This document shows positions 8,645-50,731 of a stretch of DNA of 64,000 nucleotides, piece by piece; the first letter of the stretch is position 1; every line of letters starts with the position of its first letter. This DNA is from Magallana gigas (Eukaryota). The notes beneath the pieces are model-generated. The model saw nothing but the letters and a program-made list of their open reading frames with translations, searched no databases and was not told where the DNA came from. Both the position numbers and the translations under genes were made by a program. Location: assembly GCF_963853765.1 (NCBI RefSeq), contig NC_088858.1, forward strand, positions 50,778,001 through 50,842,000. Direction: 5' to 3'.

Positions 8645-8699
8645 CATCAATTTTCGTCCCTTACGCCCAAGGCATTATCAGCCACAAAGACCAAGATTT

Positions 8700-11164: not shown

Positions 11165-11223
11165 AGCATAATCTTATGTCTGTTCAGAACATCCTCGTAT
11201 TATAATTCAATACTAAGTTTTCA

Positions 11224-11829
11224 GGTCCCAACACCACGGTCTGGATCATTGGTTCGTCAATTATCAAACATGCATCCCATCACGCTGTCCAACAATTTGG
11301 AAACCCACACCTAGACCTTCAGAAACATAATATCACAGTATTTTGGCATGGAAAGAGTGGTATGGTCTGGGAGGATGTAGAGCCCACAATTACAAATATC
11401 ATTGAACAAAGAGGCCAACCAGATTGGGTAATGTTACATTGCGGGGGCAATAGTATTCGGACAATGCCGTTGCTAAGACTTCAAAAATTCATGAAATTAA
11501 CCGTTGTTAACCTACAAACAATTCTGCCGAATACAAGATTCATATGGTCCCAGATACTCCCACGAAATTACTACAGACATATGTTATCAAATATTGCCGG
11601 CGAGACCGCTCGAAAAAGAATTAACAAATCATTAGCCCAATTTATAGTCAAGCGTAAGGGCGCCTGCTTAAAGTACCCTGATCTACAACAGTGTTCACCA
11701 AAATATTACCGTGATGGTGTACATTTGTCTGATACTGCTCAGAATACATTTTTGAAAACCATACGTGCTGGCCTTCTAAACATACTACATAATAATGTTA
11801 AAGTTTATGCTAAATCCCACGCCGAGTAA
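11224..11829 (+). CDS. SGNH/GDSL-like hydrolase ORF carried by the Ngaro element
   Basis: The open frame extends upstream of the ORF-track ATG (11362). Blocks VWIIGSS, GKSG, HCGGNS and DGVHLS supply the S-G-N-H residues. No in-frame ATG before the catalytic Ser (stop at 11203-11205); acceptor-like ttttcag|G at 11224/11225. Confidence 0.8.
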   Translation, partial: GPNTTVWIIGSSIIKHASHHAVQQFGNPHLDLQKHNITVFWHGKSGMVWEDVEPTITNIIEQRGQPDWVMLHCGGNSIRTMPLLRLQKFMKLTVVNLQTILPNTRFIWSQILPRNYYRHMLSNIAGETARKRINKSLAQFIVKRKGACLKYPDLQQCSPKYYRDGVHLSDTAQNTFLKTIRAGLLNILHNNVKVYAKSHAE

Positions 11830-12169
11830 TTCCGCAGTCTTATTGTCATGGCATTGTGCAAAATTTTGACCGCTTGTGGCGGATGTCTTCATGTATCATA
11901 TCATAGATTTTTCATACATGAAGACATATGGCCGAATTTTGCTTAAGCCTGCCCCGGATTCTGTTTACTTCCAGGTCCGTGGCCAATAATCGGGCTTATT
12001 TTAATTGACACTTTGTATGATTCAGACATTGATTGACAGTGAGTCATTGAATACACTGAGTAATTGAATAATTCTATTGATACATTGGGTTGATTGTCAT
12101 AATTGAATACATTGAGTAATCAATTAAATTGATACATTGATTGTCATATTGAGACATTCACTAAAGTAA

Positions 12170-12300
12170 AACATTGATTATACTTTATTGATTTGCATAT
12201 TGATTGATTGATTGATTGATTGAAATATTGTTTGAATTATTGATTGATTGATTTCATTGATTGATTCATCTTGATTGATTGATTGTTTGGTTCATTGAAG
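12170..12300. repeat. Imperfect (GATT)n microsatellite in the Ngaro 3' region
   Basis: Runs of tgattgattgattg interspersed with degenerate ttgaatacattgag units from ~12020. Confidence 0.8.
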
Positions 12301-15300
12301 ATCTAACATCATAACTACCCAAAAGTCGATGTTGGTCATTTAACTTACTCTATTGCTATATTTGCAATATTTTGCATACGATTGAATAGTTTATGATGTA
12401 CTGATATATCAAAATAAAGCCATGACAGAGACTGCCAATACGGTGTTGTTAATCTATTTTATTGAAATAATCCGACTTAACTCGATGTGAGTTAAGTCAT
12501 GTTATGGAAATGAATAGATTAACCATTTCACTAATTTATACATCGAAAGAAAGATAACTCCTCAATAAAATGACAAGTTTTATTACGTCACAAACGTTGA
12601 ACGCTGTAAACTGCAACGTCACGAGCGAAAAATCAAAGTTCACGCTTGTGGCTGGTACTGTGGCTTTTCCATTAATATTAACTTAGGATAAGATAGCAAT
12701 TTTAAGGGATAATTCACATTTGCAGACAAGGCAAGAAGTTAAAAAAGTGTAAATATAAGCATTAAATCATGATTTTTTGAAGTATTCAGTCTCATTACTG
12801 CAGCGATGTGTGCATACGAATTTTCATAACGCGCTAATGAGACTGTATACTTAAAAAAATCATGATTTAATGGTATAGTTCATGTAGTTTTCCTTTGTAA
12901 ATCTGACAACATAAAATTTAATCCTGATTTCGCTTCACTGTGATTTCATGTTTAGAGTATTACCGGGTATTCATAATATTAGAGCTTTTTGTAGGGCAGA
13001 ACAAAAAAGTGACAAAGGTATATAAAGGGTCCTGGGTTATCATCTTCTTTTAGAATTCCAAGATAATATAAACTATATAGTTTTATATGTACATGTAAGA
13101 GATTTTTGTAGACCAAGATAATTGTAAGGAGATCAAAATAAGGTCTGACATCAAATAATTACTCTGAATGTCTTGTAAATTTAAGAAATGATCCATTTTC
13201 ATCAAGCAAATCATTGATGTATATATACTATAATTGTACAATTTTCTTATTATACCATTCAGTAAAGAGAAGTGAATTTTTACAGTTTATGCATCATAAT
13301 CTGTTTTTAATATACCATGACAGATGATGTTCAGATATTCAAAAAATCTATACATTTGTGAATAAATTTCCATGAAAATAGTTAATTATCAGTTTCCTCA
13401 ATCTATTATTATTGACAATAAATCAACTTGGCATGAAGCCTGTTTGACTAGGACTATAATAAAATCAAACATATTTTTTTTTCTAAGCATACATGGCCCC
13501 TGAGTCAGGGATTCTGGTATTAAGACAGGGCTCTAATAATTATATAGGATAGGGTGGTGTAGTTTTGTCCAATTATTTTTTGGTACTTAAGATTTGTTCA
13601 TTTATGTCACTGTATATTATGCTACAATTTTTAAAAAAATTTTAGAATTTAGAAAGTTAAAATAATTAGATTAAGCACTCCCAGATTATTAAAAATGATT
13701 TCATTAGCACTGTAGTCATAATATATAAAATAAATATATACAAGTGTTCTCTAATTCAAAATTTGTTTTTTTTTCTCTTTCATCTGTGTAAAATAGATTT
13801 CTCTTAATTGCATGTAGGTCTATGATTTCTTAATTTTTTCTACACCCCCTCCCATATTTATTAAGGAAATAATAGAGGGACAATTCACAAGTTGTTATTA
13901 GCCACTTTGTTTAAAATAAATAGGCCAACATGTAACACTATAATTAACATCCATTGTTGTTACTGAATCTATACACAGTACAGACTCGGTAACAACAATC
14001 AAAACAGTGTAGCATAAAAGTAAACTATATTTAATTTAGAACATTAACTTATCTTGCACAATTTGGCAGACAGTCACACAGGTGATATCCCCCTGTACTT
14101 TGTTTGCAGGTGTATAAAATGCTTTATTTGGTGATTCATACAGTATAAGAACGTAGCAATTAATGCAGAAAGAAGATGGTTTCTGTATTTATGCTTGCCT
14201 CCTTCATAGCTTGCATGAATCACCAAAGAAATAATTTTGCACATTTCATTATAAATGTCAATATCTGAATAGAATAAAGTACCTCAATATCTGGAATACT
14301 GGGTGGATCTGCCATCAATCTTCTCCTGTCATCTTGCATTGGCTGTTGAATTCAAGTGAATTGTGAACATCAAGCAGATAGAGAGAAAAGTATTAATGTA
14401 AGCATTGACATGTAACAATAGAAACATCCATTGATGTAAGCAAATTTATACACAGTGTAGCATGAAGGTTAAAACTGATTTAAGTTAGTACATAAACATA
14501 TCTTGCACAATTTGATTGAAAGGATAGATAGACTGTAAAAAGCTTAGTGTTATTTTACATGGTAATCATACATTGAACTTAACATGTTGATTGTGTTTAA
14601 TATTTAATGTAATATTTCTATACTAGTATCCAAATTATGTGCTTGTAAGGAGGGATTAGAATTTATACATATACTGTTTTTACAGTACATGTATTTTGAA
14701 ATATAATTCCAAGTGAAATAAACCTGATAGTTGTATTCTGTTTCATTTCTTCTCTGATTACTATTGGGGGAACAAGAGCAAGGAAGTTCAGCATTATTCT
14801 GTAAAATATAATAATACCAACTGAGAATGTATGAAAAAATTATCATTATTGTAAACATGCAATGATGTTCCCGTATATTCATTGTGCCTTTGCAAATTAT
14901 TGTAATTGTGTTTGTGTCAATAAAATATTTGTATAATTGATTGGCAAACAAGTTGTCAGTGAAGACTTTATATGTAACAGTTATCGGTGACTTACTGGCA
15001 AGGAAAGATAATCATGGTCTTTATATAGAGTTGACCTTATTGGGATACCACCAACTGTTGTTGGGATTACCAGAAGAACCTATTAATGAAATGAATCACA
15101 TAATTAGTTACAACATGAAAAAATATTTCCAATTATTTCTTCCAATTCTTATCAAAACCACTATTGTTTTATATCAATACAGTACATTTCAAGTCACTAG
15201 GGGGTTTGGAGGGTTTATAAAATGAAGTAATTGTAGTACTTGATGCTACACATATTTATCGACAGTTTGTTCAGTATTTTGTATATGCCTGATTGTACAA

Positions 15301-16474: not shown

Positions 16475-17205
16475 GATGTTGGCCATATTGGCCTCACCCT
16501 AAGGTCTGAACCCCTGAATTTAACACTAACAAAAAACATTCAAAAATACAAAATCTGACTTCAAATGGATCAAATTCGAATCAAAAAAATTTCAATCTCA
16601 AGAAAGATTTATTTACTTCTATGTTATTTAATCCTCCAGGGGAGCTTCTTTCTCCAAAGTATTGACTCTATGACGATTGTATTGGGCAAGGAATGAGTCA
16701 ATATTCCTATCAACACTTTCGTGTTACAAGAGGCCCCGGTCAAAGGTCACCCGGACATAGCGATATAAACAAATTGACTTCCGAAAAGCAAATCGACAAA
16801 ATAAAAGCAAGATTTCTATGATAGTACAAGAAAATATGTGTTTAAAAACTTTTCAGACTTGAAAAATCTCGTAAGATCTGTTCTTTCCTAGCATAAACAA
16901 ATAAAAATCCATTCATAAATTTTGTGTTTGATTGGTTTCAACAATGCTTGGTTTCGATAATGATCATGATGATTGTCATTCACGGTCATATTCATTGGAA
17001 TTGTGTGATAACTACACACTAAAATTTAAGTAAAATAAATTAAATGAACATTGTTATATACATTTAAATAAAAACATCATGCATTTCATATTTTTTGTAG
17101 AACATATCCAGTTTATGGGTAATATGTTGTTGATTTTACGTTGCTTTATTATAAACGTTCCTCTGCATGGTTTCACGTTCTGAAGTTTTACAAAATCAAC
17201 AAAAA

Positions 17206-18707
17206 ATGTCAACCAGATGCTGTGCTTTTAGCTTTTGTACAAATAATGCAACCAAAATTACAAAATGGAAAAAACAGATGTGTGAAATTCATCAAATTCA
17301 GCATTGGTTGGGTTCCTGTATTTGCGACCCGCCATTCAAACTTTTCCCGTTTCCAACTGAACTAAAAGATAAATATGGACGGCAAAAGTGGACCAGTATA
17401 ATTAACAGAAAAAATGGCTCAAGGTTGTGTTCTGACCATTTTATTGATGGGAGGCCAACTCCAACAAACCCATACCCCACGCTGAAACTAGGGTACACAC
17501 CCCATAAGCCCATTGTATCTAAACCGACCCCAAAGGAAAAAACTCTGCAGCCCACTAAAGAAAAGAGAAGAAGATTTGAACAACAGCCTTCCCCAATCCC
17601 AACATGTGACAAGGAAGAGAGTAACAATTTTATAAATGTGCAACCAAGTTGCTCATGTGATAATGAGGGAAAAATCGCCCTTTTAGAGGCTAAAATTAAA
17701 GACCTTGAAATAAAACTTGATGCAAAACCAAAGGAAAAACCAGCTCCCCTCAATAGATTTTCATTAAGCAAAGTTTTAAAATCAGATGCAAAAGTTAAAT
17801 TTTACACTGGTTTTTCCAATTTGGCATCTTTCAATACTGTCTATCAAACTATACACCCCCATATTCATAAACTGCGCTACCGGAAGGGTCCAAAAAGGGT
17901 TTGTAATCCTTTAAAACAAAAGAACAAGTTCTCAAGCCATTACAGAACACTAGGTCCTAAAGAAGAAATGGTAATGTGTCTAATGAAATTAAGATTAGGC
18001 TATCTCAATGAAGATATTGCAGACAGGTTTGGTGTGTCAGCCACACATGTATCCAGTGTATTATCAACTTGGATAAAACTCCTAAGCTTAATGCTTAGCA
18101 CACTAGTATTCAACCCACCCAGAGAGGTAGTAATGTCAAATTTGCCCCCTTCTTTCCAAATTAATACCTATCGAAATGTACGACATATAATTGACTGTAC
18201 AGAGATTTTTATTGAAACACCCAAACAATTTACAGGTAGCCGCCCAAACCTGGAATGATTACAAGCACCATAATACTGCGAAAATCTTAATCAATATCAC
18301 TTCAGCTAGAATGATCAACTTTGTATCTGAGGCTTGGACTGGTCGTGCCAGTGATAAGTGTATAACACTTAATTCTGGCTTTCTAAAAATAATAGAGCCC
18401 TGTGATAAGGTTATGGCTGATAGGGGGTTCCCTATAAGAGAAGAGCTCACCCTGTTAAGGGCAGATCTTTTGATTCCTCCAGGTAGGCGGGGGGGGGGGG
18501 GGGGGTCCTCAAATGTCTGCTTCTGACGTGTCGAAAACTAAAGGTATTGCAAATAGGCGTATGTACGTAGAGCAAGCAATACGCCGTAAGAAACAGTGTC
18601 ATATCATCAAGAATGAAATGCCAATTATCCTATTACATCACTTAGATGATACAACTAAAATAATTGCTGGCATTTGCAATTTATACCCACCACTACCTAG
18701 ATATTAA
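17206..18707 (+). pseudogene. THAP-domain DDE transposase (two frameshifts)
   Basis: THAP CCAFSFC...LFPFP...KW...RLCSDHF; coiled coil; KFYTGF; LMKLRLGYLNEDIADRFGVS (HTH); catalytic IIDCTE, MADRGF, YVEQAIRR. Frameshifts near 18220 and in the poly-G at 18488-18505. Confidence 0.9.
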
Positions 18708-18972: not shown

Positions 18973-21430
18973 TTAAACATTACATGATTTACAAGTTTTA
19001 CTAAACCAAGAAGAAGTAGTGTTCAAAACTGACTTTGACGTGCCTACACATTTAAAGTGATACCAATTATCACACATATCACAACAAATGCTGCGCTGTG
19101 AAAATGATTTTACATTTTTTTGTTCTTGAATCTGGCTTTTACAAATCAAACAGAAATAAACACCTCCACTACTTTCAACCTCCATTGGTTTTGGTTCACA
19201 TTCATTGAACATTTTAACTTGGCATGAAATAACAGGTATATTTAGTTTTTCACAAACTTTTGGTGCATTGATTGTTTTAAAGAAATCAATCAAGTTAACT
19301 TGAACATCTGCAAAGTATTTTTCCTCAAATTTGATTCTTTTCAGAAAATTACCATTACAGGAATACACAAAAAAATCACACCACCTGCGCTTTGTAATGG
19401 TCATCTGCCCTTGAACTTGACAAAAATAGCGGTGATTTTTCTTAATGTCTATTTCACCATCAGTAGATAAAAGATAATCTGGTATATTACATAAACAAAA
19501 TGAAGGGCATGAATCACATTTAAGTTTCATTATTGATTTTACCTCCAAAAGCCCTTCACCACAACAGTCACATGACATCAACATATCAGGACTAGCAGCT
19601 AAATAAGAAAACTCATGATGTAAAAAGATTCCACATTCCCTAAATTTTGCATTGACATGATTATCTTTATAAATTTTACAGTAGATAGTCTTTGCAAGTG
19701 GCTCAGATTCTCTTCCAAACTTCAATGCTTTGATGTTAGAATTAGCAGTTGATTCACCCATTATCACCGACACAATCGAACTCATATCTACTTCAGGATT
19801 TTTCTTCAGTGAATTCATGCGAGTATGAACGGCATAAAAATTAGAAGCAGTAATCCTGCCTTTTCTCAGATCGTGCCATAAAGAGTTACTACTTTGTCCT
19901 ACAGTCTATTCCTCAATGAGGTTGACTTCATTTTTGTCAGAAATTGATGGTCAATAAAGTCCTCAACTGTCTGATGACCTGAGGCGATGTTGTTGAGGCA
20001 GTACCGGTAGGCTTCCACTTCACATGCTTGTTGTCCAAGTTCTTGAGAAATTTCAAGAGGCAATACTTCAGGTATATCTGTACCTGTTAATAACAAAAAA
20101 GAAGCACAACATTTTTGACAACTTTCTCATGTGTATATACATGTAATAATTTACTTTTAAAAAGGAAAAGTCAAACAACAATCACTACTATACAAACACA
20201 CATAAAGTTAAGGACTGGTTGAAATTTGCTATAATACCTTTCAACAGACAAGCATTTAGAACTGCTTTTCTCAGCTCATCAATAAATGTATTCCTGTCAA
20301 GGTTCAATGACTCAAGCGGTTTAAACTGGTTTTTCAGATTGGAAACTAACGGTCTTGTTTTTTCTGCAGAATAAAATAGAGTGAAAAAATCCACAACAGT
20401 ATAAATTAAAAAAGAAAATTATTAAATTTTAAACATAAAATAAAACAATATTTATAAAAATACCATGCCCATGGCGCGACATTCGAATGGTCAAATCTTT
20501 AATCTTTGTTGGCACCACCTTAGTTGCTGCTGGGACCACTGGCATGGTAATGATGTGCACGATGTAAGACCTAGTTTATTTGCTGACTCCACTCGAAACA
20601 AAAGGACTGCTACGTGATTGCAAGTCTGACCCATTCTGAAATTTGAAACTATATATTTTTTAAATCTTGACAAAAATAGACAAATATAATGGAGAATTTT
20701 AAATTAATAATGATAATTCCCAGCAAATAAAAACCATTTAATATGTGTAACAAGTATAACCAAGCTTTAAATATATATATACAATCATAATACAGAAATT
20801 TATTTAAAATATTAGACTAACAGTAAAATTAAGTTACCAAGCAGTACAGGAACAAAATGCAGACTTAACACATCCAGATTCCTTTGAAATAGCCACCCAC
20901 ATCGTGTGATTCTCGTCCGTGACCCTCTGACTTGGGGTACACTTCGCTCTAAAGAAGCATACTGGAGATGTGGAAGAAACAGAATGAAAAAATATTTCTT
21001 TAATAGAATTACATGTAGCTGAACAATATTCAAAAGCCTTGCCAATTTTGTAATCGTCCATGTACGTTTTCACGGTGTTGCTTGTGCCTTTGTCTATAAA
21101 GAAATTTACAATGTCAGATAATAATAACGGTGGCCACTGAGACATCCAACTCATTTCATCCTGCCATCCTGCCCCTATTTTGAACGGATCGGGTAACACA
21201 GACCCATCAACATGCAACAAATCGTTATATTCTTTCTGAGGCTGACAAACATATTCACAGTCTGAAACTTTCATAGGCAACTTCATGGAATTCACAGCGA
21301 AACACAAAGCAGCTAACTCGGCCTTAGTCCCATCGGTAGACAGTCCTCTTTTGCTTAAAAAATCCTTCAGTGCTTCCAATTTCCAAGAATTAAACGTTTC
21401 TAAAGAAAATGTGTTATAACCGGGATCCAT
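18973..21430 (-). pseudogene. SAP-SWIM-YqaJ exonuclease-PHD finger gene of the transposon (4 exons, disrupted)
   Basis: Exons 21430-20838, 20636-20464, 20363-20238 and 20083-18973 with GT-AG introns. SAP-like LKDFLSKRGLSTDGTKAEL; SWIM CSCTA.MGQTCNHVA; YqaJ GRITASNF, LAASPD, LLEVK, YFCQVQGQM; PHD CLIC...CCDMCDNWYHFKC. The exon1/2 junction forms TGA; frameshifts in exons 2 and 4. Confidence 0.85.
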
Positions 21431-33061: not shown

Positions 33062-35436
33062 GGTGTCATATTGATACAAACTCATAAATAAATTGTATGC
33101 AATGGTTTAGGAATCATAAATTGGTTCTTTTAATTCGTTACGGAGATCGTAGGGGAACTTTTAGCCTATAATACATTTTCACTTCAAAATCGCCTGGGGA
33201 ATACGGTACCTTCTTTTTTTCTCTCTGTTTTTAATAACAATAAAAAAAAAATAACAATTATAAAGACGGACACATACTTTTCCTTTTATGAAAGTTTTAA
33301 CCTGCATATTGTCTCATAGAACCTGTAATATATTTGACTCTTTAATCAATTTTTAAAATCAAATTTTTCGATCATCATATACATGTACTAATAGTCTTGA
33401 AATTCTTCGTCATTTATCAACCTCGCTTAAACTTCTTGTGATTTTTTATTGAACGCATGATAAAATAAAGAATATGTACACATGTTCATTGTTTAATGAA
33501 CTTGTTAGATATATCTTTTTTCTTTCGTTTTTGTGATTTGCTTCGGCTGATCACAGCTGTGTCCATATGAGGCATCCGACAAATTTCGCTATCTTCGCAA
33601 GCATTACGCTTTGCACTACTTTCTTAACTAATCTTTAATTAATAGTTTTATAACTAAGGAACGATATTTTGATGTATTTTACTTAAGATTTTGCCATTTA
33701 TACAATTTCACAATGATGTAAATCATGTTTTGTTTTTTTATATACGTAAGAATTTCGTTTGGAAGTACACTTGTACTAAACGTTAAGTTAATTCGTTCCT
33801 TTCAATTTCGGAAAGCAACAAACATGCAATTTATCCTATTAATTAAACGCATGTCGTATTTAAGGCCAACGTTACATAAAACATTTCATATTGACAACTA
33901 AAATTACATTCCGATCATTTCTTCAAAAGGAATACTTCCTCCATCTTATATTTAGGCGATCCCTTAACCGGATATAAAAGAACGGTAACTTATGTTTGTA
34001 TTTTCAAAGTTATTGTCTTATATTTTTTCTCTATAATACACGACTCTCTTAAAGATTTTATTCATAAATTCTTTAATAAAAAAATGAACAAAAGATGTTT
34101 TTTTTATTTTTCTTAAATAATTTTTATTAAAAAATGTCTGGACATGATTTATTAGATATCAATACCATTCATTTATTTACTTTTAAGAGGGTTACTTGCA
34201 ACCAAAACAGGTTTTTTACTTTCTTATAAATAATCTAAAATTCGTATAAAATAAATACAGGCATGTATTCTTCTTTGAACAATGGAATCATGTTTCAGAA
34301 ACGATACTTTAACAATCTGTAACACACGGTAATATAATATTTGGGTGTTGCATTCCACCTTCATCAATCCAATTCAATCATTTCCGGACCTTTCATGTGT
34401 GCCTGATATTGTCCGGAACAATGAGTCCGGTTCCGGTACCCCTTCTCTCTATGTGTAGGTAGAATAATGAGTTTGAAAGACGGATAACTTACTGTTATAT
34501 TAATAATATATAAAAAACGAAATAGCAATGTACATACCAAACCACTTTATAATTGATAATTTATTCATTTAAAAAACATTCTTATCTTCAAATTCGGAAA
34601 CCTTTAAAAACCGTTGAGGAGTTTGTGGGACCTCAATGATTCTAACGGTAATTTTTTAAGTCATGTATGTTTACAAACAAATCCTTCTACATGTAACACA
34701 CATCGGTTTTATAAATTGTCAGGTTCATGTAAAATTTAACTCAAAATTCCCTCAGTATGAGCCACAAAATGACAGGCTTTTAACAAAATGCAGAACTCTC
34801 TGCAAATCTGTCGATATTGCAACGTATCGCATTGCGTTTACATTCGTATTTGAGGTTTTTTTGTCTAATTTACGCAGAAATATCATTAATATTTGCAGTT
34901 CTAAAATTGATTTTCATGTTGCTTTTAAGAGATGCCTCACATTATCTTGAAAGGAGTTTGGATGTAGCAATCAATATTAATGTAAAAAAGATAAAGAAAG
35001 AAGAAATTGTAAGATGCTTGCCGGAAATGATTGGGGTAAATAAATTATTGATAGGCAACATGCACGGATCTAGAGGAAGACCCCTCTTGAAAGTTTAAGT
35101 TTATTAAATTCGCATATTAATATTTACAATTATTTTACTCTCTCTCTCTCTCTTTCTCTCTCTCATGCCGGATTTTTTTTTATTTATGATGTACATTTTG
35201 TATACCCCGAGGTTTGTAGACTATAAACACACTCTCTGTTTATGACAAACGCCCATCAACGTTTACATTTGAAAGTGGTAATGCAGACAGATTCACCTCA
35301 GAGTCTGTAAATTAATAAATACAGTATTCAGAATGATATATAATTTTCTCTTTCTCCTCATATTAAACTTAACAAACCATGGTGTATATATTTCTATTTT
35401 GTTGCGTTAAGTTTGTTTTAATCCTGGTAAATAATG

Positions 35437-35440
<4 letters not shown>

Positions 35441-35520
<80 letters not shown>
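35441..35520. repeat. (CT)40 microsatellite
   Basis: Perfect dinucleotide run; a shorter CT run lies at ~35138-35165. Confidence 0.98.
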
Positions 35521-35523
<3 letters not shown>

Positions 35524-37137
35524 GATGGAGTATCAATGCATCAGAACAGGAGATAACATGGTATAGCACAATCAATAAAGACACAGTCAAAGACCTTACA
35601 CAATAGCCAGCACAATAAATGTTTACTTGATGGAATCCCTGCAAGACTACGGCCAAGAATACAAGAATACAGAAATAGTGTTAGTTCAAGTCTGTTTGGG
35701 GGAATTACAAGAGTATCTGGCTCATACAAACCCCAAACCGTCATGGATTCCTAATGATCTTCAGTATTTAGATTAACCCTTGTTATGCAATAGGAGTTTA
35801 ATGAGTGAATATGTATCCAGGAAAAACTTTTGGCTTACTTGCATTCCTGATTTTGCAGGTAAGTTGCAGTGTGTGTGTGCCAACATGTAAACAATAATCC
35901 TATTTTAAGAAATATAGGCATCTAATTGGGATCTTTGAAGGATGCCCAACAGAAATCACATTGCCTGTCTGTCCGTCAGGTTTAGGAATAATTTATTAAT
36001 ATGAGGAATACTTTTTAACTTTTTAGGATTGTTCATAGAATTTTTACAACCACAGAGTATTTCATTTCAAATTTTAGGGACAAACTATTGTAGGTGTAAA
36101 CTGTCTTCCTGGAAAATTCCGATTAAAACAAGCTTAAAACTTACAAGCCTGACTATGTTAAAAATGTACCATAGGTAGGCTGCGCAAGTTAATTGTTTCA
36201 TTTATGTGTAACACACTGATCCGTAATTCGGTATTGGACGCTCTTTTTCCAAGATTTAGTCAGCTTTGGACTGGATAGTTTCATTTTCTAAAAGACAAAT
36301 TGCTTACATTTTTTCATGGATATTTATCAACATGTCAAGGATGCTCTCAGTCGCTGAAGGCTCAACCTGCCTTCTCGATTTATGTATTTTTTGGCAATGT
36401 CCTAAAACTTAATATACTTAATTATCATAATTTATAAACAAATATGACATTCTTTTCTTTAAATGCATCTATGTCTAAAAGAATAACTATTCACAAAAGT
36501 TGTGAAGCATAATTTATCATATTTTACTGCATCTCTTTCTATTTAATTCAGAATTGTGTTGGATCAGTTGAAAATATCTTTACATGTTAAAGCCTTCAAC
36601 GTTTTGAATACTTGATGTATCTACCGTACCGTACCGTAACGTACTGAACCAATATTACTCAATTAATTTACTATGTACCTCCTAAAAGTTTTATATGGAT
36701 GTACTTGACCACCCTAAAGATATATTTGTGAAGATGGTCGACTGGTAACTTTGTCCATATTTCATATCCATTAACGATGATAGGCATGTATACACAATAT
36801 TCATTTAAATGCATTTTATTATCAACATTACCAACTGTCAAATATTGTTGCCCGCGTTTTTAATTTAAAATTTAAATATCAATTACTAGCCCAAGAGTAA
36901 ATAAAATTATTCTTTCAAAAGTCAATTATCAAAATATTTTTAAAAAAAATTAACTTTCAAATACTTTGCGTGCATTTCGTATCAAATTAAAACATCAAAA
37001 ATTACATCAATTACTTTCACACGAGTATTTAATTAAGTCATATCTTTAAAGTCAATTTTCTTCCTGCCGACTTATGATAAAGACGTCTTTATTTAAACTT
37101 CAAATTAAGTGTGCAACAAATATTACTTCGAAATGAT

Positions 37138-38676
37138 TTAAACGCAGATTCCTTGCTTGTTGCACTTTTGCGATTTATCACAGCACGTGTATGAAGCTTT
37201 GTGTTTGTATGCACAGCAGTCCTCCCCCGGGGGACACGGTCGCGAGGAACAAGTCATCGGTTTCGGCGGTGGAATACGTGGGTCATAGTTACAGAAAACC
37301 CCTGAACATTTGGTGCCAGGTAAAATACTAGCAACAAACAGATCTAAAACTGACGTCTGCTGCATCGGCGCACCATAGTCAAACGGACCGTTCCAGTTCG
37401 ACGAAAACACGGGTCCCGTCACCTTAAAAGACGGAGGACCATCTTTAAACACAATGTAACATTTTGAAATTGGAACCTCGTTGCACATATTTTGTTTAAG
37501 ATTTGCCTGAATTTGGAATTCCATCCAATTCTGGTATTTCTTACGTAAGGTTGCGTTATTCACAGTATCCATGAAATATCGCAGGTTTCTGACGAATATT
37601 CCTTTGAACATCTTCGCATCGTCATCGCAGTCTGGGTCGCAGTTCTTCTCCGTAAAGACCCCAGTCGTATTGCTGTTGTAGTCAATGACGGCAGAGGCTA
37701 AGTTCTCAGCGAGACCGAGATAGGACTCGTTCTTCGTTAATCTATACATTTCAGAGAGCGCACCTATCAACACTCCAGTCTCATATGTAAAACCAACAGT
37801 ATTTGAGGGCTTGCATGTGTCTAGATCTATTCCATCACTCATTAGATAGGTAGAACTGTTTATGAAGTTGTTTGCAAAAAGGAAATTTTCTATCATTTCG
37901 GATTTGTTTCGGTACTCAGTGTTGTTTGTCAAACGGTAAAGTTTTGCAGCTACATGGAACATTTGCACGTTGGTGATTGCCACTTTGGCATTGACATTGT
38001 TATCAAACCACATCCCGCCTTCACATTTATTAGATGAATCCCAACCCGTCTTCCAGCACCAGTCGAAGATGTCTTGGGCTGTCTGTAGAAACTCTTGGAA
38101 GCCGAACAGCTCGTATATCCTCGCGTAGCTAAGACCGTACCATCCCATGTCATCAAAGGAAGGGTAGGGACCGTAGGCCTCCATCAGCGAGTATAGATCT
38201 CTGTGTGACCCTTTCACTACACTCATATATCTCTGGTGCTTTGCAAATTCTATGAAGTTTGCCATGGTCTCAAGAACAGCTCCATTTTGCCAAAACCCAT
38301 CATATCCATTCCATACCTGAAGAGCATGTTTAATATCACTAACTTATACGAACTCCATTTATACACTTCTTTGAGCATAATCTACTTAATTGGAAAAAAT
38401 TACAATAACCATTTACTTGTATTTAATTGAAAATTATAAGAATAAGTACGATTATATTTCCATCTTGCTTACGTATACCTGATAACTGTATAGTCCGGCT
38501 AGCGGAGAGGGGAACCAGTTACACTGGTGGGCAAACTGGGCGATACAGGCCAGGTAGGCTCCGTGGTCGCCCCCAAACATCGCCACGGAACACGTGGTGT
38601 TCTCGTCGCCGACCACGGGACCGATGAAGCAAATAACGACAACGGCGAGGAAAACGACGGGATTCAGCGACGCCAT
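37138..38676 (-). CDS. Secreted glycoside hydrolase family 76 (alpha-1,6-mannanase-like) with C-terminal Cys-rich module (~458-460 aa)
   Basis: Exon 38676-38479 (or -38473; both donors phase 0) holds the signal peptide; exon 38316-37138 follows acceptor ttcag|. GH76-type motifs GFWQNG, SFDDMGW (catalytic DD), GGMWF, AITN, TYETGVLIGAL, MFKGIFVRNL. Probable 5' UTR intron 38686-38777. Confidence 0.85.
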
Positions 38677-41400
38677 TGTACACAGCTGTTACAATTATAA
38701 TTGAATAATACCCTATGTATATCAATTCAGGTGTCAGGTTATCATATTGTTACTGATAATTGAAATGATATCTTTACCTCGTCCCCGATATAATTCAGTG
38801 TGCAGGTATTTGTCTAAAGAGTGAAGGTCGTACACAGGTCAAATTGAAGAATATGGTCCATGTATATCTGTACCAAACATTGCACATGTAGCTCATTACT
38901 AGTGATTTGCAGTATAAATACATTTGTTGCAAATCTGAATAATCGATTGTTTCTTCAAGCATTAGGAATACTTTATATCATTGTGTGATTTATGTAGAAA
39001 GGAAAACATTTTCTTTAAAAAACACAAATGAAATCATGTTATTCGGTTATTAGTGTTTTTTTTCATAATTTGAATGTTTCAATTCATGAGATAATTATTT
39101 CATATTCAGTTAACAAATACAGGTCAACGATAAATATACGAGAATCATAATCAGTTAATATTTACGATTGCCTGCGGTGTACAATGTTGTTCAGAAAACA
39201 TTGGTAGCAGTTTAAATACATGTAAGAAAACGCCTTTTTTCTCTAAAAACCTACATAACATGAGTATGACGAAAATCCTGTAGCTCATGAGCAAATGAAC
39301 AGTGTTGCAGAAATGCATTTTAGTGGGATTTTTTTTAATTTAGATTAAACCGAATCTGGTACTGTCTATTAGCAGACTTTCGGATCAATAACAGTTTGTA
39401 TGAAATAAAACACGTGTCGTATACACTTTTCTGGAAATATTTTTGCATTGCCGTTAGGGTCATGATTTTTTTATCTACAGTTTAGAGTTTTGCATGCGAT
39501 ATTGATACCCGACTCGTTTGCTAAAATGAATTGATAAGCAGGCTTTGGTCGACCGTTATTTAACATTCAAACGAGTAAAGATTGAAGATGTTGATGATTT
39601 TCGCCCAATCTTTTTATCGACATAGCACCTTCCATTAAAATACATGGAACTCATCATCTGATTTTTGGAAAATTACTAGTTTTACACAAAAATGCCCAGC
39701 ATCTCAAAATTTCTTCAAATTAATGAGTTTATAGAGTCAAACCAGCAACCATAACTTAATCATTATCAAGATACGATGAAACAGTGTATGCCTAGAAATG
39801 AAATATTCTAACAATATACAATCTTTCATGCAAGAGTAATTATAGAAACCTTACAACCTTACAACTAGTTCCACTACTTATATAGTAAGTATATTCTTTA
39901 GGGACAGGAATGATAAGTAAAACCCGCGCGCGTGTGCACTAAAGTGACCCCATAGGGATCGAGCGTCTCGCCCTGACAAACACCGGCTGGGACGACCAGC
40001 TTAATAACAAAATGCAAATACGACGAACAATGTGATGAAGGTAACAGGAATCAATAGAATCAAGATATTATTTTCTACGATAAAGAATCGACGAAAACTG
40101 TGGTATCTCTCAATAAAGGATTTTTTTATAAGAAGTAAATTACCCTGATTAGATATCACATTTCCGTAAAACAGGACAGATTAGTTGCTTCAACAAATTA
40201 CTGTCAAAATTAAGCATACACATGTATTGCATAATACATGATTGTAGATCTGATCTTGATACTTGTGATGATATGATGCCATAATCAACGATTTATCATC
40301 TAACCGAAGGTAAAAAGTTTGTTTTTAAATACTTTGTATTTCTTTTATGTCAGTTAAAATCAAAGTCGATTGCTTGATACGTTTGTTCTTGCAATTTGTA
40401 ATAGAAAATTCTTAATTAATAATTAATAATTAATAAATTAAGAATTAATAAACGGTTGGGGGGGGGGGTAACACTTTACAAAAAAAATAAAAATAGGAAG
40501 TAGTCCCTGAGAGCTACAAATAAAAGAACACTGTATACTTTAAAAGTTTTTTAAGCCAAATTCTTTAGATTTTTACACGATTAATCGCCATAAGTTAGAT
40601 GAAGTCCCAATATGGTGGTTTTGGTATAGTTGAGTTACCTTTTAGCCGCTGTACTTGTAATTAATCTCCTCTGGAGCCCCTGTCACCAGTCACGGGGGTC
40701 AGTTTACATAATCAGGCTTAGAGACCTTCTAAGATGAAGAGACTTTATCTTGACAAAGGGTTAACATAGAGTCTAGATGTCGAAACTAAAGTAAATATTG
40801 CCGCACCTCCAAAAAGGTTTTTGGCCATTATCAGTATAACCTTAATCGACCCTGCCCTGGTGATGAGGCTCAGGCACTCTGTTAGTGCCACCGGTGGCTT
40901 GATCCAGGACTTAAATCGCAAAATAAATATTTCTATAGCACACTATAAAGTCGTTAACGATTAAGTCATTCAATTTCAAGGCGATTGTAGTAGCGCAGAT
41001 CTATGGAAGTTGTTTTTAAAATGTAGTGTGTATTCCATCTAATCTCTATACGATTAACATAATTATTTCTTGGTTTTGCTGAATTCTCTTATACCCTATA
41101 ATCAGCAGTGAGAAGGAATTAAAGAATCTCATTCAGGTCTAAATTGGAGTAAACAAACGTGAAGATAGCTAATAATTCTTCTTAAATCCCTAATGATACC
41201 ACCGGATTCAAGGTGAGATATAGGAACTGGTTGTTCTTTGGTGAGTTATGCAAGACCTTCACAGCTATCCCGAGAACGAAACACAATTAAATCACATAAT
41301 TACACCAGGCACGGAGAGACGGACGCAGGGTAATAGCGGATTCCTCCCCAACAGGGAGAATCTTGTACTCTCGGTGTACGGAATAACTTTCGCTTTGTAA

Positions 41401-46600: not shown

Positions 46601-49600
46601 GAGTATGTGCAGTAAGTCATGTGACGGTGGATTATCCAATCAAAAGCGGCGATGTTACGGCAATATTAACTGCGCAGGACCGGGCGTTAGATATCGACAT
46701 TGCAATACAAGAGTTAGTATCAAATTCAAGACCCAAATCCTAAATATCATGTCATAAATAATCAAACTATCAAGTACTATTAATTCAGATACAATTTCTT
46801 ATTTGCAGCCATGTAGCGGTTATCTCTTGAACGATAACGCCCGAATCTGCAATGTCCATAACAGCGTAGGCAGCACTAGTGCTGTTCGGGAGTGGAGTCC
46901 GATATCAGAGCAAACATACCCGTGTTTCGTGCTTTGTCATGATCTGTCTGGAAACACTCCGAATGAAATCAGAACAGACAAAGAAGATGGCACCAAGTGT
47001 GGTTCTGCTGAAAATTTCTACTGTATACAGGGGGAATGCAAGGTTTGGTATACAAAATAATTAAGACAGTTAATACAATTTATTTTTTATTATTATAAAT
47101 TTAAAAAATAAAAATTCTACAACGCGTGAAACAAAAGAGGTTTTTTTATTCAAAATGCATTCATTAACATTTTTGACAGCGACTTGGCTGTGACGGAGAG
47201 GTGTGGTCTAACAAGGTGATTGACGGGTGTGGAGTCTGTGGCGGGGATGGCTCAAAGTGCTCGACCAATGCAACGAGGCCCCAGTTCTACTGGCAGCTGG
47301 ACTGGTCGCCATGCTCAGTCACTTGTGGCGTTAGTTTATTTTATATAATTCAGTGGGTGCATTCATTCAATATGACGCATGATCATTATAATATGTAAAC
47401 CTCCTTATATTGAACGGGTGGGAAGGGGGTCATAATTTGACTTTCTGTGCGAATCGAGTAATATATTTTGATATAAAAGTGCATAAAGAATAAATACATG
47501 TACGGAATTGAACTTAATTCCTGTACCTAATAAAGCTGAAATCACATCTACGCAAAATATATCCGTAGGGAATAAGATTTTATTTCTTTACATGTACCCA
47601 ATATCTGGCTTTGAAATTGTAGAAATCATTGCCAATTTTGACATTGGTTGGCTTTGCAGATATGATTTATTATCAATAAGTCAAGGGCATTTTCATATTT
47701 TTTTGAAAAGTAAAACTTGAATAAATAGTCGAGTGTTCTTTTTTAATAGACATTGTCAGAAAATGCCTTTAACTTCAATTATTTCTACACTCTGTGCATT
47801 GTTTGTATAGACAGGTCACCAGGAATCCATCATACACTGCATGAATAACCGAACCAAGAGGAGAACAATGGACTATTTCTGTGACCGCGAGATCAGACCC
47901 AGCGACCTGACCCGGGAGTGCTCCCCCTCCGACTGCCCTCCCCGGTGAGATCTCCCGCCATCAGAGCACCACTCAAATACTACAATGAAGCGTTTTGTGT
48001 ATTTAGTGTTAGAGAGCTAACAATTACAAATGGTTGTGTTTGCTATGTTTAATTACACAAGTAAAAGATTAATGTATGTTCTTTTTGAAGGTGAAATCCA
48101 TCTAATAAATTAATGTATACATTCAGAACCAAGCGAACTTTACTTGAGAACGGTTGTCGGGTACTATAGGTGCCAGTCAGCAAACTTTACGTGTGGTAAA
48201 TACGGATATTCATTTAACACATGTAAGGCAGTTAAGAAAAGTTAACAAAGCTTTAAATGTTCACGTATATCAGGTGGGAAATTTCCTCCTACGGACGATG
48301 TTCCGTGGAATGTGGCGGTGGAATACAGCGCCGGAACATCCGGTGTGTGGTAGGGACCGGAAGAGCGAACCTTATAACAGTGGGATCCTACCAATGTCCT
48401 GATCCTATCCCAATCACCGAAAAGGCTTGTAATCTGAACTTTTGTCCTGCCAGTTGGCAGACTGGTAAATGGAGCCAGGTTTGAACCCATTTGTCACACG
48501 ATCTTATAATATGATAACGTACAATAAATACCTTTTACATAAACAAATTCATTATATAAGAATATATTTGTTTATTCTTATTAACTTTTTAATACTCTGT
48601 GTACTATTTCAGTGTTCAGTAAGCTGTGGAATAGGCACCCAAACCCGCAGTCTGACTTGCGTTAAATTTCCAACTCACGGAATAGAAATCAACGTATCGC
48701 ATTCGGAGTGTTTTGGAGCACGACCCGAGACCACCCGTGCCTGCTCATTGGAAGCTTGTTTTAAGGAGTTTTTTTCCGTGCCTTCCATTGTTGTTGATAA
48801 TTCTACTTTTTTGCAAACTCAGCGCATGAAAAAGGTGTATCTTAATGTCGGCGGCAAAGCCATTTTATTGCCAAAGCAACCGGTGAAAATAAGATGTGTA
48901 GTTAAGAATATGGATAGCAGACTGATATTCTGGACTAAGGACGACCGTCTTATTTCTGTGTCGCCGTACAAGAGAGTCCATGTTACTCCAAAAGGAGTCC
49001 TTAAAATTAAACGAACAGATCCTAATATTGACAAAGGCACGTTTACTTGTATGGCCGGCATTGAAAAAGCCAGCACTTACATAACTTTTCAAACCAAGAA
49101 AAAAGCCGTGAAGGTCGCGAAAAGTATGATGAAGCATGTGTTACAAGAAGTTCCCAGTTTAGATAAACCACAATCGGATAAAATTCCGGGATCGCATGAT
49201 CATCTGCGGCCACTAGGGGGCAACAGTTCCACACTGGCGGAGTATATGGTCAGTGATTGGTCAGCGTGTTCTAGGAGCTGTGGCGCTGGCGTACAGACAC
49301 GGGAAGTGACGTGCGGAGTATTCTCTGACAAGTTCCTCAAAGTTGTTTCTGTAAAACAGTGTGAACGTCAAACGAAACCGGTCAACTTAAAAAAATGTTT
49401 ACTACAGGAATTTTGTCCTCAGTGGGATGTAGACAAATGGGGAGAGGTAAATTTATTTCTGAATTTGAATACTACACATTGCTCAGATGTGAAATATGTC
49501 TTAATGTTTTTATTTTTACTGTTTCGGTCAAATACATTTGTCTTATTTCAGTGTAGCGTAAAAACATGCAAAAAGGTCGGTAAAGCAGTTCAACGCCGCG

Positions 49601-50731
49601 CAGTGTACTGCACAAACGGAAACGGAACTGTCATTCGCCGATCTAAATGTCAAAATGTGCCCGTACCCACGGGGTCCCGGGAGTGTGATAATGCGGACTG
49701 TAAAGTAGAATGGATTACCTCCAAGTGGACCAAGGTTAGTGGGGACGATAAGTACTCAAATCTAAGTCAACTTATGTCAGAAAACAAGATATAGTTAATA
49801 CATTAGTAACGATTTTAGATTTTAAAAAATTAAATATTTTTTTTCAGTGCAAACCCCATTGTACACCTCGAGGAAAGAAGTTTAGATCATTATCCTGTGT
49901 GTGGAAAAGAACACAAAAGTTCGCTTACTCTCAGTGTTCGTCACTTCCACGTCCACAAGCATGGAAACAATGCAAATCTAATTGTAAAAAAGGTGAATTA
50001 TCTTTTAAATTCATTACAGGTTAATTTAATAATATAATTTGTTGTAATTTTTACCCATGAGCTCTCGAGTTATCAGATGCCGACTTTTAATACATGTACA
50101 TGTTGTTTAATACGGTCTATCGAAAAAAAAACAAATCATATTTTGATTTAACCTTAATATTATTCACAATAAAATTATTATCAATGGTAATTCTTACAAT
50201 TTTATGCACTCACCGTCTACATTTTAAAAATCAGTTCCATTGTATTTGATAAAATTAATAAAGTCTGCAACTCCAAATTTATTTCGGCCAAAAGTAGTAA
50301 AATTTAATTTTATGCATATAGTATACATATATCTGGGCAAGATTTTTTATTGTAACTATAATTTAGAAAAAAGGAATAATTTAATAGTTGAATAATGTAG
50401 GTTATTTTTATCTTTGAATGGCTTTGATGGAGAGCGCTCAATACACAAACGGAAAACTATTTTTTTTAAATTCTGTTACCAAGTTTTAGTGATCTGACAC
50501 ATGGAAAATGGCCTCAAAATGCAAAGTTCTTCTTTCATTTGGCTTATAATCACCATTAGGTAATTAGGATGATTTAAATAAAGACATATAATGATCCTCA
50601 TATGTGAATTTTCTCTTGCAGAGTGTCACGACCATTCCAGGTATTGTTCACTGGTAGGACGGTTAAAGATGTGTCGATACGAGACGTTCCGAGAGAAGTG
50701 CTGCCAAACATGCAAACGTGTGACAGAATGA
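43662..50731 (+). CDS. ADAMTS-like (punctin/MADD-4/ADAMTSL1-3-like) extracellular matrix protein, ~727 aa
   Basis: Ten coding exons: 43662-43691, 46554-46712, 46809-47042, 47180-47329, 47811-47944, 48274-48478, 48613-49446, 49552-49734, 49848-49992, 50622-50731 (2184 nt, frame-consistent). Signal peptide MWMVLCLTLLVCPFETTA; TSP1 WSGWSEWSMCSKSCDGG; Cys-rich DGTKCG and LGCDG...CGVCGGDGSKC; further TSP1 repeats; one Ig domain; PLAC (CHDHSRYC...CCQTC). No metalloprotease domain. AATAAA 51032-51037. Confidence 0.9.

What the first reader, a model, noticed from the sequence alone, without database searches (positions are those of the whole stretch)
37138..38676. Intact GH76 alpha-mannanase-like gene in an animal genome: horizontal-transfer candidate
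GH76 is characterised from bacteria (yeast-mannan degradation) and fungi (Dfg5/Dcw1 wall transglycosidases) and is not a standard animal family. This gene is domesticated: signal peptide, GT-AG introns, catalytic Asp-Asp intact. Yet almost the whole catalytic domain lies in one 1179-bp exon, unlike the intron-rich neighbours, and exon 1 is notably GC/CpG-rich. It could give a filter feeder a way to digest or attack fungal or algal mannans, or to cross-link extracellular glycoproteins.
Basis: partly seen in the sequence, partly recalled or inferred. Interest (0 to 1): 0.72.

Follow-up and report, generated by a model that had tools for sequence, protein, structure and literature searches.

The report
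Ancient animal GH76 mannanase gene in oyster
This oyster gene is a real, expressed, secreted GH76 alpha-mannanase-like enzyme, but it is an old animal gene shared from sponges to amphioxus, not a recent import from microbes.

Summary
A two-exon gene lies on the minus strand: exon 1 at 38676-38479, a 162-nt GT-AG intron, and exon 2 at 38316-37138. It encodes a 458-aa protein with a signal peptide, and RNA contigs confirm the splice.

It is a GH76 enzyme. It matches Pfam PF03663 at E 5.6e-42, and all 32 best structural matches are GH76. The catalytic Asp-Asp (D121/D122) and two CtGH76 disulfides are conserved.

Recent horizontal transfer is not supported:
- Orthologues form one 100/100-supported clade covering bivalves, a gastropod, an annelid, a brachiopod, amphioxus, tunicates and a sponge. 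Where the tree is resolved, it follows taxonomy.
- All of them share an animal-only C-terminal module of about 55 aa with 10 cysteines.
- The oyster intron sits at the identical site and phase in Saccostrea, Pinctada, Lingula and Branchiostoma. A second intron is shared by Lingula and the sponge Sycon.
- An ADAMTS-like neighbour is conserved in Saccostrea and Pinctada.
- The large exon therefore reflects intron loss. The GC-rich exon 1 is lineage-specific.

The deep origin remains open. The nearest outside relative is a stramenopile, and the stem branch is long.

A 2020 survey already lists one GH76 gene per bivalve, expressed in the hepatopancreas. The most likely role is a secreted digestive endo-alpha-1,6-mannanase. 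No activity has been tested.

The parts
38479..38676 (-). Exon 1 coding part (66 codons). It encodes the signal peptide and the first helix region, and ends ..LAGLYSYQ in phase 0.
   Evidence: Translation; RNA contigs cover 38475-38688; GC 58.6%, CpG o/e 1.18.
38608..38676 (-). Predicted signal peptide, residues 1-23 (MASLNPVVFLAVVVICFIGPVVG|DE).
   Evidence: Hydropathy windows of 2.5-3.6 over residues 4-23, then a polar stretch. The cleavage site was inferred by eye, not by a predictor. N-terminal hydrophobic leaders are present in the orthologues.
38317..38478 (-). The only intron: 162 nt, GT..AG, phase 0, 25.9% GC. This is ancient 'intron A'.
   Evidence: The joint is seen in RNA contigs X1 and X3. 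The same site and phase occur in Saccostrea, Branchiostoma, Lingula and Pinctada.
37138..38316 (-). Exon 2 (1179 nt, 392 codons plus TAA). It holds the GH76 (alpha/alpha)6 catalytic domain and the C-terminal Cys-rich tail.
   Evidence: Translation; Pfam PF03663 E 5.6e-42; AlphaFold model pLDDT 93.4; Foldseek top hits all GH76.
38149..38154 (-). Codons of the catalytic Asp-Asp (D121, D122 of the full protein; D55, D56 of exon 2).
   Evidence: Aligned to CtGH76 D163/D164. D55 is invariant and D56 is at least 90% conserved in 65 sequences.
37141..37308 (-). Animal-specific C-terminal module of about 56 aa with 10 conserved cysteines (C-x4-C-x13-C-x4-C-x5-CC-x9-CC-x5-C-x5-C).
   Evidence: Conserved from the sponge Sycon to tunicates and amphioxus. 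Absent from the stramenopile, green-alga, fungal and bacterial relatives. No Pfam match. No significant PDB fold match.
36852..37137 (-). 3' untranslated region, about 240-285 nt. The exact end is not fixed.
   Evidence: RNA contigs end at 36896 (X1) and 36852 (X3).
38677..38688 (-). Minimal 5' untranslated region seen in RNA contigs.
   Evidence: Contig X1 reaches 38688. The true start site is not determined.
48469..49794 (+). Large exon of the neighbouring ADAMTS-like gene (TSP1 repeats plus Ig). It serves as a conserved synteny marker.
   Evidence: Pfam TSP1_ADAMTS E 1.4e-24 and Ig_3. An ADAMTS-like TSP1/PLAC gene also flanks the GH76 gene in Saccostrea and Pinctada.

Best explanation
This is a vertically inherited member of an old, animal-type GH76 subfamily. 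The subfamily was already present, with introns, in the common ancestor of sponges and bilaterians. It was later lost in many lineages and kept mainly in marine and freshwater suspension feeders. The oyster gene encodes a secreted, disulfide-stabilised enzyme with N-glycosylation sequons and an (alpha/alpha)6 barrel. By analogy with solved GH76 enzymes, the neighbouring aspartates D121/D122 would act as nucleophile and acid/base in a retaining endo-alpha-1,6-mannanase mechanism. It is most likely released in the digestive gland to cut alpha-1,6-mannan backbones of ingested fungi, yeasts and other microbes, or related mannose cores such as GPI glycans. Shown here: gene structure, transcription and splicing, family and fold, conserved catalytic and canyon residues, phylogenetic distribution, shared introns, synteny and purifying selection. 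Inferred: secretion, substrate and digestive role.
For: Family and fold: PF03663 at 145 bits. The best solved relative is CtGH76 at E 1.5e-29, with the DD motif aligned. The model has pLDDT 93.4 and pTM 0.92. The 32 best Foldseek PDB hits are all GH76. Five of the seven aromatic canyon residues of CtGH76 stay aromatic (F8, W9, F176, Y178 and the F before K238, in exon-2 numbering), and both CtGH76 disulfides are conserved.

Age: orthologues at 41-77% identity occur in nine bivalve genera, Gigantopelta, Owenia, Lingula, two Branchiostoma species, three tunicates and the sponge Sycon. In the LG+C20 tree the animal-type clade has 100/100 support and the bivalves 100/100. Internal order follows taxonomy: Pinctada with the oysters, the Imparidentia together, and Styela outside Ciona plus Clavelina. 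Intron A (..SYQ|xWNG, phase 0) is shared by the window, Saccostrea, Pinctada, Lingula and Branchiostoma. Intron B (..ARIxE|, phase 0) is shared by Lingula and Sycon. The 10-Cys tail is conserved across all animal members and absent outside them. The ADAMTS-like neighbour is conserved in Saccostrea and Pinctada.

Constraint: against Saccostrea, pN is 0.14 while pS is 0.86 (saturated). Among four coding variants in the RNA contigs, three are synonymous.

Expression: spliced RNA contigs come from several studies, and strand-consistent polyA reads were found. PMC7560691 Table 1 lists one GH76 gene in each of five bivalves, including C. gigas, with high expression in the hepatopancreas.

Substrate availability: fungal alpha-mannan and a GH76 that consumes it are documented in marine blooms (PMC9213526).
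Against: No enzymatic activity of any animal GH76 has been measured. Two of the seven canyon aromatics of CtGH76 are not conserved (S43, A110). Identity to characterised enzymes is only 20-24% structurally aligned, so the substrate could differ. CtGH76 itself also binds GPI-core glycans. The published oyster expression also includes male gonad, which is not a digestive site. The distribution is patchy. Gigantopelta is not a filter feeder. Relationships between phyla in the tree are unresolved, and the sponge is not basal. Introns A and B lie at sites resembling proto-splice sites (CAG|R, GAG|G), so parallel gain is not strictly excluded.
Confidence: 0.62

Rival explanations
1. Recent horizontal transfer. 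Under this view the gene entered the bivalve or mollusc lineage from a fungus or bacterium and was then domesticated, and the single large exon and GC-rich exon 1 are relics of that event.
For: GH76 is overwhelmingly fungal and bacterial: 9876 and 5450 of 15,624 sequences in PMC12295086. Nearly the whole domain lies in one exon, and exon 1 is GC-rich. The best solved relative is fungal.
Against: Orthologues occur in six animal phyla, in one 100/100 clade on a long stem (0.91 substitutions per site) that is not nested in any fungal or bacterial group. The intron site and phase are identical in oysters, Pinctada, Lingula and amphioxus. The animal-specific Cys tail is shared with a sponge. Microsynteny is conserved across Pteriomorphia. 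Exon 2 GC (44%) equals that of other host exons (40-43%). Saccostrea exon 1 is only 44.9% GC.
Confidence: 0.03
2. [quoted passage not shown] The Cys-rich tail and introns were then added, followed by vertical descent with many losses. The predicted enzyme function is the same as in the best explanation, and only the deep origin differs.
For: No named choanoflagellate, filasterean or ichthyosporean orthologue appears among the hits, although EukProt is a source of the database. The nearest sequence outside animals (P0068) lacks the tail. It lies on an intron-poor contig whose UGGT neighbour is most similar to stramenopile UGGTs. The next-nearest relatives are a taxonomic mix: the green alga Cymbomonas, Botrytis, the euglenid Entosiphon and bacterial MAGs. 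That pattern is typical of a family that moves between lineages.
Against: The tree is unrooted, and no donor clade encloses the animal clade. Most outgroup sequences could not be named. Absence from unicellular holozoans rests only on the named fraction of hits. Vertical descent from an earlier eukaryote, followed by losses, fits equally well.
Confidence: 0.3
3. The protein is not a digestive hydrolase. Instead it acts on the animal's own or on microbial glycoconjugates. It could be a Dfg5-like transglycosylase that cross-links or releases GPI-anchored or mannosylated extracellular proteins. Alternatively it could be an immune effector or recognition protein against fungi.
For: The GH76 family includes transglycosidases (Dfg5), and CtGH76 binds GPI-core glycans (PMC12295086). 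Expression is also reported in oyster male gonad. The conserved Cys-rich tail could be a binding module.
Against: The protein lacks the Dfg5 hallmarks, namely a C-terminal GPI signal or a transmembrane helix. Its C-terminus is polar and Cys-rich. Its similarity to CtDfg5 is far weaker (E 3.3e-9) than to the secreted CtGH76 type (E 1.5e-29). The main reported expression site is the hepatopancreas in both scallop and oyster. Retention is mainly in particle feeders.
Confidence: 0.22

Closest known systems
CtGH76 of Chaetomium thermophilum (PDB 9R4K; Fungi/Bacteria-mixed GH76 subfamily, PMC12295086)
   Same: It is the best sequence match (E 1.5e-29) and the best structural match (E 1.8e-17, TM 0.71/0.77). 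Both are secreted enzymes with a signal peptide and no GPI anchor. They share the DD motif, both disulfides (C204-C279 and C339-C345 equivalents), most canyon aromatics, and the C-terminal W-GPF segment.
   Different: Identity is only about 24-30%, below the >35% the authors use to define a subfamily. The oyster protein belongs to a separate clade on a long stem. It carries an extra 10-Cys C-terminal module and two extra N-terminal cysteines. Two canyon aromatics are replaced.
Bacterial endo-alpha-1,6-mannanases: BcGH76/Aman6 (4D4A), ShGH76 of Salegentibacter (6SHD), Bacteroides BT3792/BT2949
   Same: They share the fold and the catalytic Asp-Asp. These enzymes are biochemically proven retaining endo-alpha-1,6-mannanases that feed on fungal or yeast mannan, including in the sea (PMC9213526, PMC4978465). 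That is the role proposed here.
   Different: Identity is 15-21%. The bacterial enzymes work within polysaccharide utilisation loci alongside GH92, GH38 and GH125 partners. The oyster gene is a solitary eukaryotic gene with an intron and a Cys-rich tail.
Fungal Dfg5/Dcw1 transglycosidases (CtDfg5, PDB 6RY0)
   Same: They belong to the same family, with the same fold and DD motif.
   Different: Dfg5 proteins are membrane-tethered by GPI or a transmembrane helix and act on GPI cores to link proteins to wall glucan. The oyster protein has no such tether and is much less similar (E 3.3e-9).
Bivalve GH76 entries in the molluscan GH survey (Wang et al. 2020, PMC7560691)
   Same: This appears to be the same gene family and probably the same locus type. 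The survey lists one GH76 gene each in C. farreri, C. gigas, P. fucata, B. platifrons and M. philippinarum, and none in Lottia or Octopus. It annotates them as alpha-1,6-mannanase with high hepatopancreas expression.
   Different: That paper only counts and names the family in a single table row. In the text passages I searched, that row was its only mention of GH76. It does not address origin, introns, the Cys-rich tail or distribution outside molluscs.

Membership tests
Glycoside hydrolase family 76 (CAZy GH76 / Pfam PF03663) | Significant match to the family profile, above the curated threshold | tested here: met
   PF03663 at E 5.6e-42 and 145 bits against a cut-off of 25.9, covering profile positions 35-317 of 366. 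Sixteen solved GH76 chains match at E <= 1e-4.
Glycoside hydrolase family 76 (CAZy GH76 / Pfam PF03663) | (alpha/alpha)6 helical barrel closest to GH76 structures and not to another (alpha/alpha)6 family | tested here: met
   The model has pLDDT 93.4 and 11 long helices; the first barrel helix is encoded by exon 1, which was not modelled. Foldseek ranks 1-32 are all GH76 (E 1.8e-17 to 2e-10). Epimerases and GH88 appear only from E 1e-6 with TM about 0.5.
Glycoside hydrolase family 76 (CAZy GH76 / Pfam PF03663) | Adjacent catalytic aspartates (nucleophile and acid/base) | tested here: met
   FDDMGW, with D121/D122, aligns with D163/D164 of CtGH76. In 65 homologues the first aspartate is invariant and the second is at least 90% conserved.
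Glycoside hydrolase family 76 (CAZy GH76 / Pfam PF03663) | Endo-alpha-1,6-mannanase or transglycosidase activity | not testable with these tools
   No animal GH76 has been assayed, as far as the literature searches show.
Fungi/Bacteria-mixed GH76 subfamily (CtGH76 type) | Pairwise identity mostly >35% to subfamily members; secreted, with no GPI anchor or transmembrane helix; two conserved disulfides | tested here: inconclusive
   The secreted architecture and both disulfides are conserved. Identity to CtGH76 and to the nearest non-animal sequences is only 24-31%. The animal clade also sits on its own long branch. It is best treated as a sister or separate subfamily.
Dfg5/Dcw1 subfamily | C-terminal GPI omega-site or a transmembrane anchor; close similarity to Dfg5 | tested here: not met
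   The C-terminus is a polar Cys-rich module ending ..KQGICV. CtDfg5 matches only at E 3.3e-9.
Recent horizontally transferred gene in an animal | Absent from related animal lineages, and nested within a donor clade in a phylogeny | tested here: not met
   The gene is present in six phyla. The animal clade is monophyletic at 100/100 and is not nested within fungi or bacteria. Introns, the tail and synteny are shared.
Recent horizontally transferred gene in an animal | Base composition foreign to the host | tested here: not met
   Exon 2 is 44.1% GC, against 40.7-42.5% for neighbouring host exons. The exon 1 enrichment (58.6%) is absent in Saccostrea (44.9%).

The most novel reading that the evidence does not exclude
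The animal-type GH76 proteins would form an undescribed pan-metazoan enzyme subfamily. It would have arisen or been acquired once before the sponge-bilaterian split, possibly by transfer from a microbial eukaryote. It would have been fitted with an animal-only 10-cysteine module and kept almost only in suspension feeders, as their own enzyme for digesting fungal or yeast alpha-mannan without help from gut bacteria.
Probability: 0.35. Interest if true: 0.6.

Novelty: new member of a known kind. Interest (0 to 1): 0.4.

Why it matters
Alpha-mannan breakdown is usually credited to bacteria and fungi. An endogenous, conserved animal GH76 expressed in the digestive gland would mean that filter feeders can attack fungal and yeast wall mannan themselves. 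That bears on marine carbon flow and on yeast-based aquaculture feeds.

The case also shows that a candidate which looks like a transfer (an odd family, one big exon, odd GC) can be a very old resident gene. Shared intron positions and an added lineage-specific module give a quick way to tell the two apart.

The animal-specific Cys-rich tail has no annotation and is an open question in itself.

Tried and rejected
- Naming the outgroups. Three cluster look-ups named only a few: Elusimicrobiales, a bacterial MAG, Cymbomonas, Botrytis and Entosiphon. A profile search added almost no named non-animal hits. So no donor or sister group could be assigned.
- The search for related loci with the broad alignment failed because no stretch was conserved enough.
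- The contexts of P0159 and P0192 were uninformative.
- The DNA of the 32-kb contig carrying P0068 was not available. A 6.8-kb sister contig (L006) was used instead, and its UGGT pointed to stramenopiles.
- The Cys-rich tail has no Pfam family, even at E 10, across 26 orthologues. It has no PDB fold match below E 1, only weak EGF- and granulin-like rows. A granulin-like reading, which I recalled from the Cys pattern, is therefore not supported.
- dN/dS could not be computed because synonymous sites are saturated against Saccostrea (pS 0.86). Only pN and pS are reported.
- One raw-read polyA run had no reads (X21) and another had only 7 (X22). They show the strand but not the level or the tissue.
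- The HGT compendium paper has no supplement held as text.
- Ciona splice junctions were only partly solved, because the assembly differs from the protein model.
- Assignment to another (alpha/alpha)6 family (GH88, GH127, epimerases) was rejected. Those matches are far weaker.

Full report
**What is there**

On the minus strand an ORF starts at 38676 and runs 66 codons to a GT donor. After a 162-nt AT-rich intron (38478-38317), a second exon of 1179 nt (38316-37138) ends in TAA. The product is 458 aa.

Two assembled RNA contigs from different studies (1631 and 1666 nt) cover 36852/36896-38312 joined directly to 38475-38688. They skip exactly 162 nt with CT..AC on the plus strand, which is GT..AG on the gene's strand. 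Stranded polyA reads lie in the orientation expected for a minus-strand mRNA. The gene therefore has two exons and one intron, a 3' UTR of about 240-285 nt and a short 5' UTR.

It is single-copy in a 564-Mb, 29-contig assembly, at 50.8 Mb of contig 6. The window around it holds typical animal content:
- an ADAMTS-like TSP1/Ig gene;
- a DIRS-like retroelement with reverse transcriptase and tyrosine recombinase;
- a THAP/HTH_Tnp_4 transposase;
- a Gly/Ala-rich secreted protein.

Contamination is excluded.

**Family**

Exon 2 matches Pfam Glyco_hydro_76 at E 5.6e-42 (145 bits against a cut-off of 25.9). GH88 and other (alpha/alpha)6 families match far more weakly.

Among solved structures the best sequence match is CtGH76 of Chaetomium thermophilum (E 1.5e-29). 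Bacterial alpha-1,6-mannanases follow at about 1e-16, and CtDfg5 at 3e-9.

An AlphaFold model built with 65 homologues is confident (pLDDT 93.4, pTM 0.92). Its 32 best Foldseek matches in the PDB are all GH76, led by CtGH76 (E 1.8e-17, TM 0.71/0.77).

The FDDMGW motif places D121/D122 on the catalytic D163/D164 of CtGH76. Both CtGH76 disulfides and five of its seven canyon aromatics are conserved.

The N-terminus has a hydrophobic leader ending VVG|DE, and the protein has seven N-glycosylation sequons. These features indicate a secreted enzyme. There is no C-terminal GPI signal or membrane helix, so it is not of the Dfg5 type.

**Distribution**

A search of 5.8 billion proteins found 74 relatives at E <= 1e-5, all of one type. 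The named ones are:
- Bivalves: Saccostrea (77% over exon 2), Dreissena, Pinctada, Mytilus, Argopecten, Mercenaria, Mya, Sinanodonta and Mactra.
- Other lophotrochozoans: the gastropod Gigantopelta, the annelid Owenia (two genes) and the brachiopod Lingula.
- Chordates: two Branchiostoma species and the tunicates Ciona, Clavelina and Styela.
- The calcareous sponge Sycon.

No cnidarian, echinoderm, vertebrate or ecdysozoan name appears.

An exhaustive HMMER scan of 1.8 billion representatives shows a sharp gap. Members of this clade score E <= 1e-67. All other GH76 proteins start at about 1e-32 with roughly 30% identity.

**Tree**

The tree used IQ-TREE with LG+C20 on 62 sequences and 468 columns.
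- The animal-type clade has 100/100 support on a stem of 0.91 substitutions per site.
- At its base lie P0068 and two unnamed sequences. The animal crown follows with 97/94 support.
- Bivalves are monophyletic (100/100), and their internal order follows taxonomy: Pinctada with the two oysters; Dreissena plus Mya with Mercenaria plus Mactra.
- Tunicates are monophyletic, with Styela outside Ciona plus Clavelina.
- Relationships between phyla are unresolved rather than conflicting.
- A second subclade holding Owenia B suggests an old duplicate in some lineages.

Outside the clade, the nearest sequences are a taxonomic mixture: the green alga Cymbomonas, Botrytis, the euglenid Entosiphon, a bacterial MAG and Elusimicrobiales. 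No donor group encloses the animal clade.

P0068 lies on a gene-dense, intron-poor eukaryotic metagenome contig. Its neighbouring UGGT is most similar to stramenopile UGGTs, including oomycetes, thraustochytrids and chrysophytes. It lacks the Cys-rich tail.

**Introns, tail and synteny**

Intron A splits ..(L/I)AGL(Y/F)SYQ | xWNG(Y/F)DGFWQNG in phase 0. The same site and phase are found in the following:
- Saccostrea echinata (190 nt);
- Pinctada imbricata (about 1.96 kb);
- Lingula anatina (491 nt, with a GC donor);
- Branchiostoma lanceolatum (406 nt).

Intron B, after ..ARI(A/Y)E in phase 0, is shared by Lingula and the sponge Sycon. Lingula has a third intron. Owenia A and an unnamed lineage (P0055, three tandem copies) have none. 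Ciona has a different set.

The simplest reading is an ancestral animal gene with at least two introns, followed by differential loss. The oyster's large exon results from losing intron B.

All animal members, including the sponge, end in a module of about 55 residues with ten invariant or near-invariant cysteines and a YDPPxPPPxPLTC..PCP core. The stramenopile, algal, fungal and bacterial relatives lack it. It has no Pfam family and no significant structural match.

An ADAMTS-like gene flanks the GH76 gene in the window, in Saccostrea and in Pinctada, where the GH76 gene is tandemly duplicated.

Against Saccostrea, non-synonymous differences are few (pN 0.14) while synonymous sites are saturated (pS 0.86). 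Three of four coding variants in the RNA contigs are synonymous. Both results indicate purifying selection.

**Composition**

Exon 2 (44.1%) matches other host exons (40.7-42.5%). Saccostrea exon 1 is only 44.9% GC. The enrichment is therefore a local, lineage-specific feature and not a donor signature.

**Function**

The survey of molluscan glycoside hydrolases (PMC7560691, Table 1) lists one GH76 gene in each of five bivalves and none in Lottia or Octopus. It annotates them as alpha-1,6-mannanase, highly expressed in the hepatopancreas of scallop and oyster, and in oyster male gonad as well. GH76 in bivalves is thus already catalogued, though not analysed or assayed.

Characterised GH76 enzymes are retaining endo-alpha-1,6-mannanases acting on fungal or yeast mannan, or Dfg5-type transglycosidases. 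CtGH76 also binds GPI-core glycans. Fungal alpha-mannan and bacterial GH76 consumers of it are documented in marine blooms (PMC9213526).

A secreted digestive endo-alpha-1,6-mannanase is the best-supported mechanism. The secretion, substrate and site of action are inferences.

**Verdict**

The horizontal-transfer interpretation fails as a recent event and remains only as an untestable-here possibility on the animal stem.

The gene is an ordinary resident member of a little-studied animal GH76 subfamily. What is worth keeping is the subfamily's breadth across animal phyla, its two ancient introns, its animal-only Cys-rich module and its retention mainly in particle feeders.

Noticed in passing
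window 37141-37308 (minus); alignment A3: The C-terminal 10-cysteine module of about 55 aa is conserved from sponge to chordates. It has no Pfam family and no significant fold match, so it is an unannotated animal-specific domain attached to a glycosidase.
   Followed up: partly
L006:1006-2262 (P0220) and the 32-kb contigs of P0068: The nearest non-animal relative (39-42% identity, no Cys tail) sits on an intron-poor, gene-dense eukaryotic metagenome contig next to a UGGT gene. The best named matches of that UGGT are all stramenopiles, among them Mucochytrium quahogii (which I recall, not checked here, as a clam parasite).
   Followed up: partly
L010:3577-6413 and 10001-13251 (Pinctada imbricata): There is a tandem pair of GH76 genes. 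The annotated 429-aa model (P0007) starts at an internal Met, and an in-frame upstream stretch (MLKLACLSLLTLPLLC..) looks like the missing signal peptide.
   Followed up: partly
L007:259-7458 (unnamed ENA contig, P0055): Three intronless GH76 copies of the animal type lie in tandem on a 1.08-Mb contig from an unnamed source. This looks like a lineage-specific expansion after intron loss.
   Followed up: no
L008:3307-3797 (Lingula anatina): Ancient intron A uses a GC-AG donor (CAG|GCAAGT) in Lingula.
   Followed up: yes
window 433-1386 (+): A 317-aa ORF with a signal-like start, long Gly/Ala runs and nine PGPIYP repeats. It resembles a structural or shell-matrix type secreted protein.
   Followed up: no
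window 8200-11830 (+): A retroelement with reverse transcriptase (RVT_1) and a tyrosine recombinase (Phage_integrase), i.e. DIRS-like, followed by an ORF that another first-stage note calls an SGNH hydrolase.
   Followed up: partly
window 17167-18526 (+) and 18973-21430 (-): A THAP plus HTH_Tnp_4 transposase-like ORF lies beside minus-strand ORFs carrying YqaJ-like exonuclease plus PHD, and SAP domains. This is probably transposon-derived.
   Followed up: partly
window 35400-35560: A GA/TC dinucleotide microsatellite, read as an (ER)n run in one ORF, lies about 1.5 kb downstream of the GH76 3' end.
   Followed up: no
window 38598: The RNA contig of run X3 carries T>C (T27A, next to the predicted signal-peptide cleavage site). 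It is the only non-synonymous variant among the four coding variants seen.
   Followed up: yes
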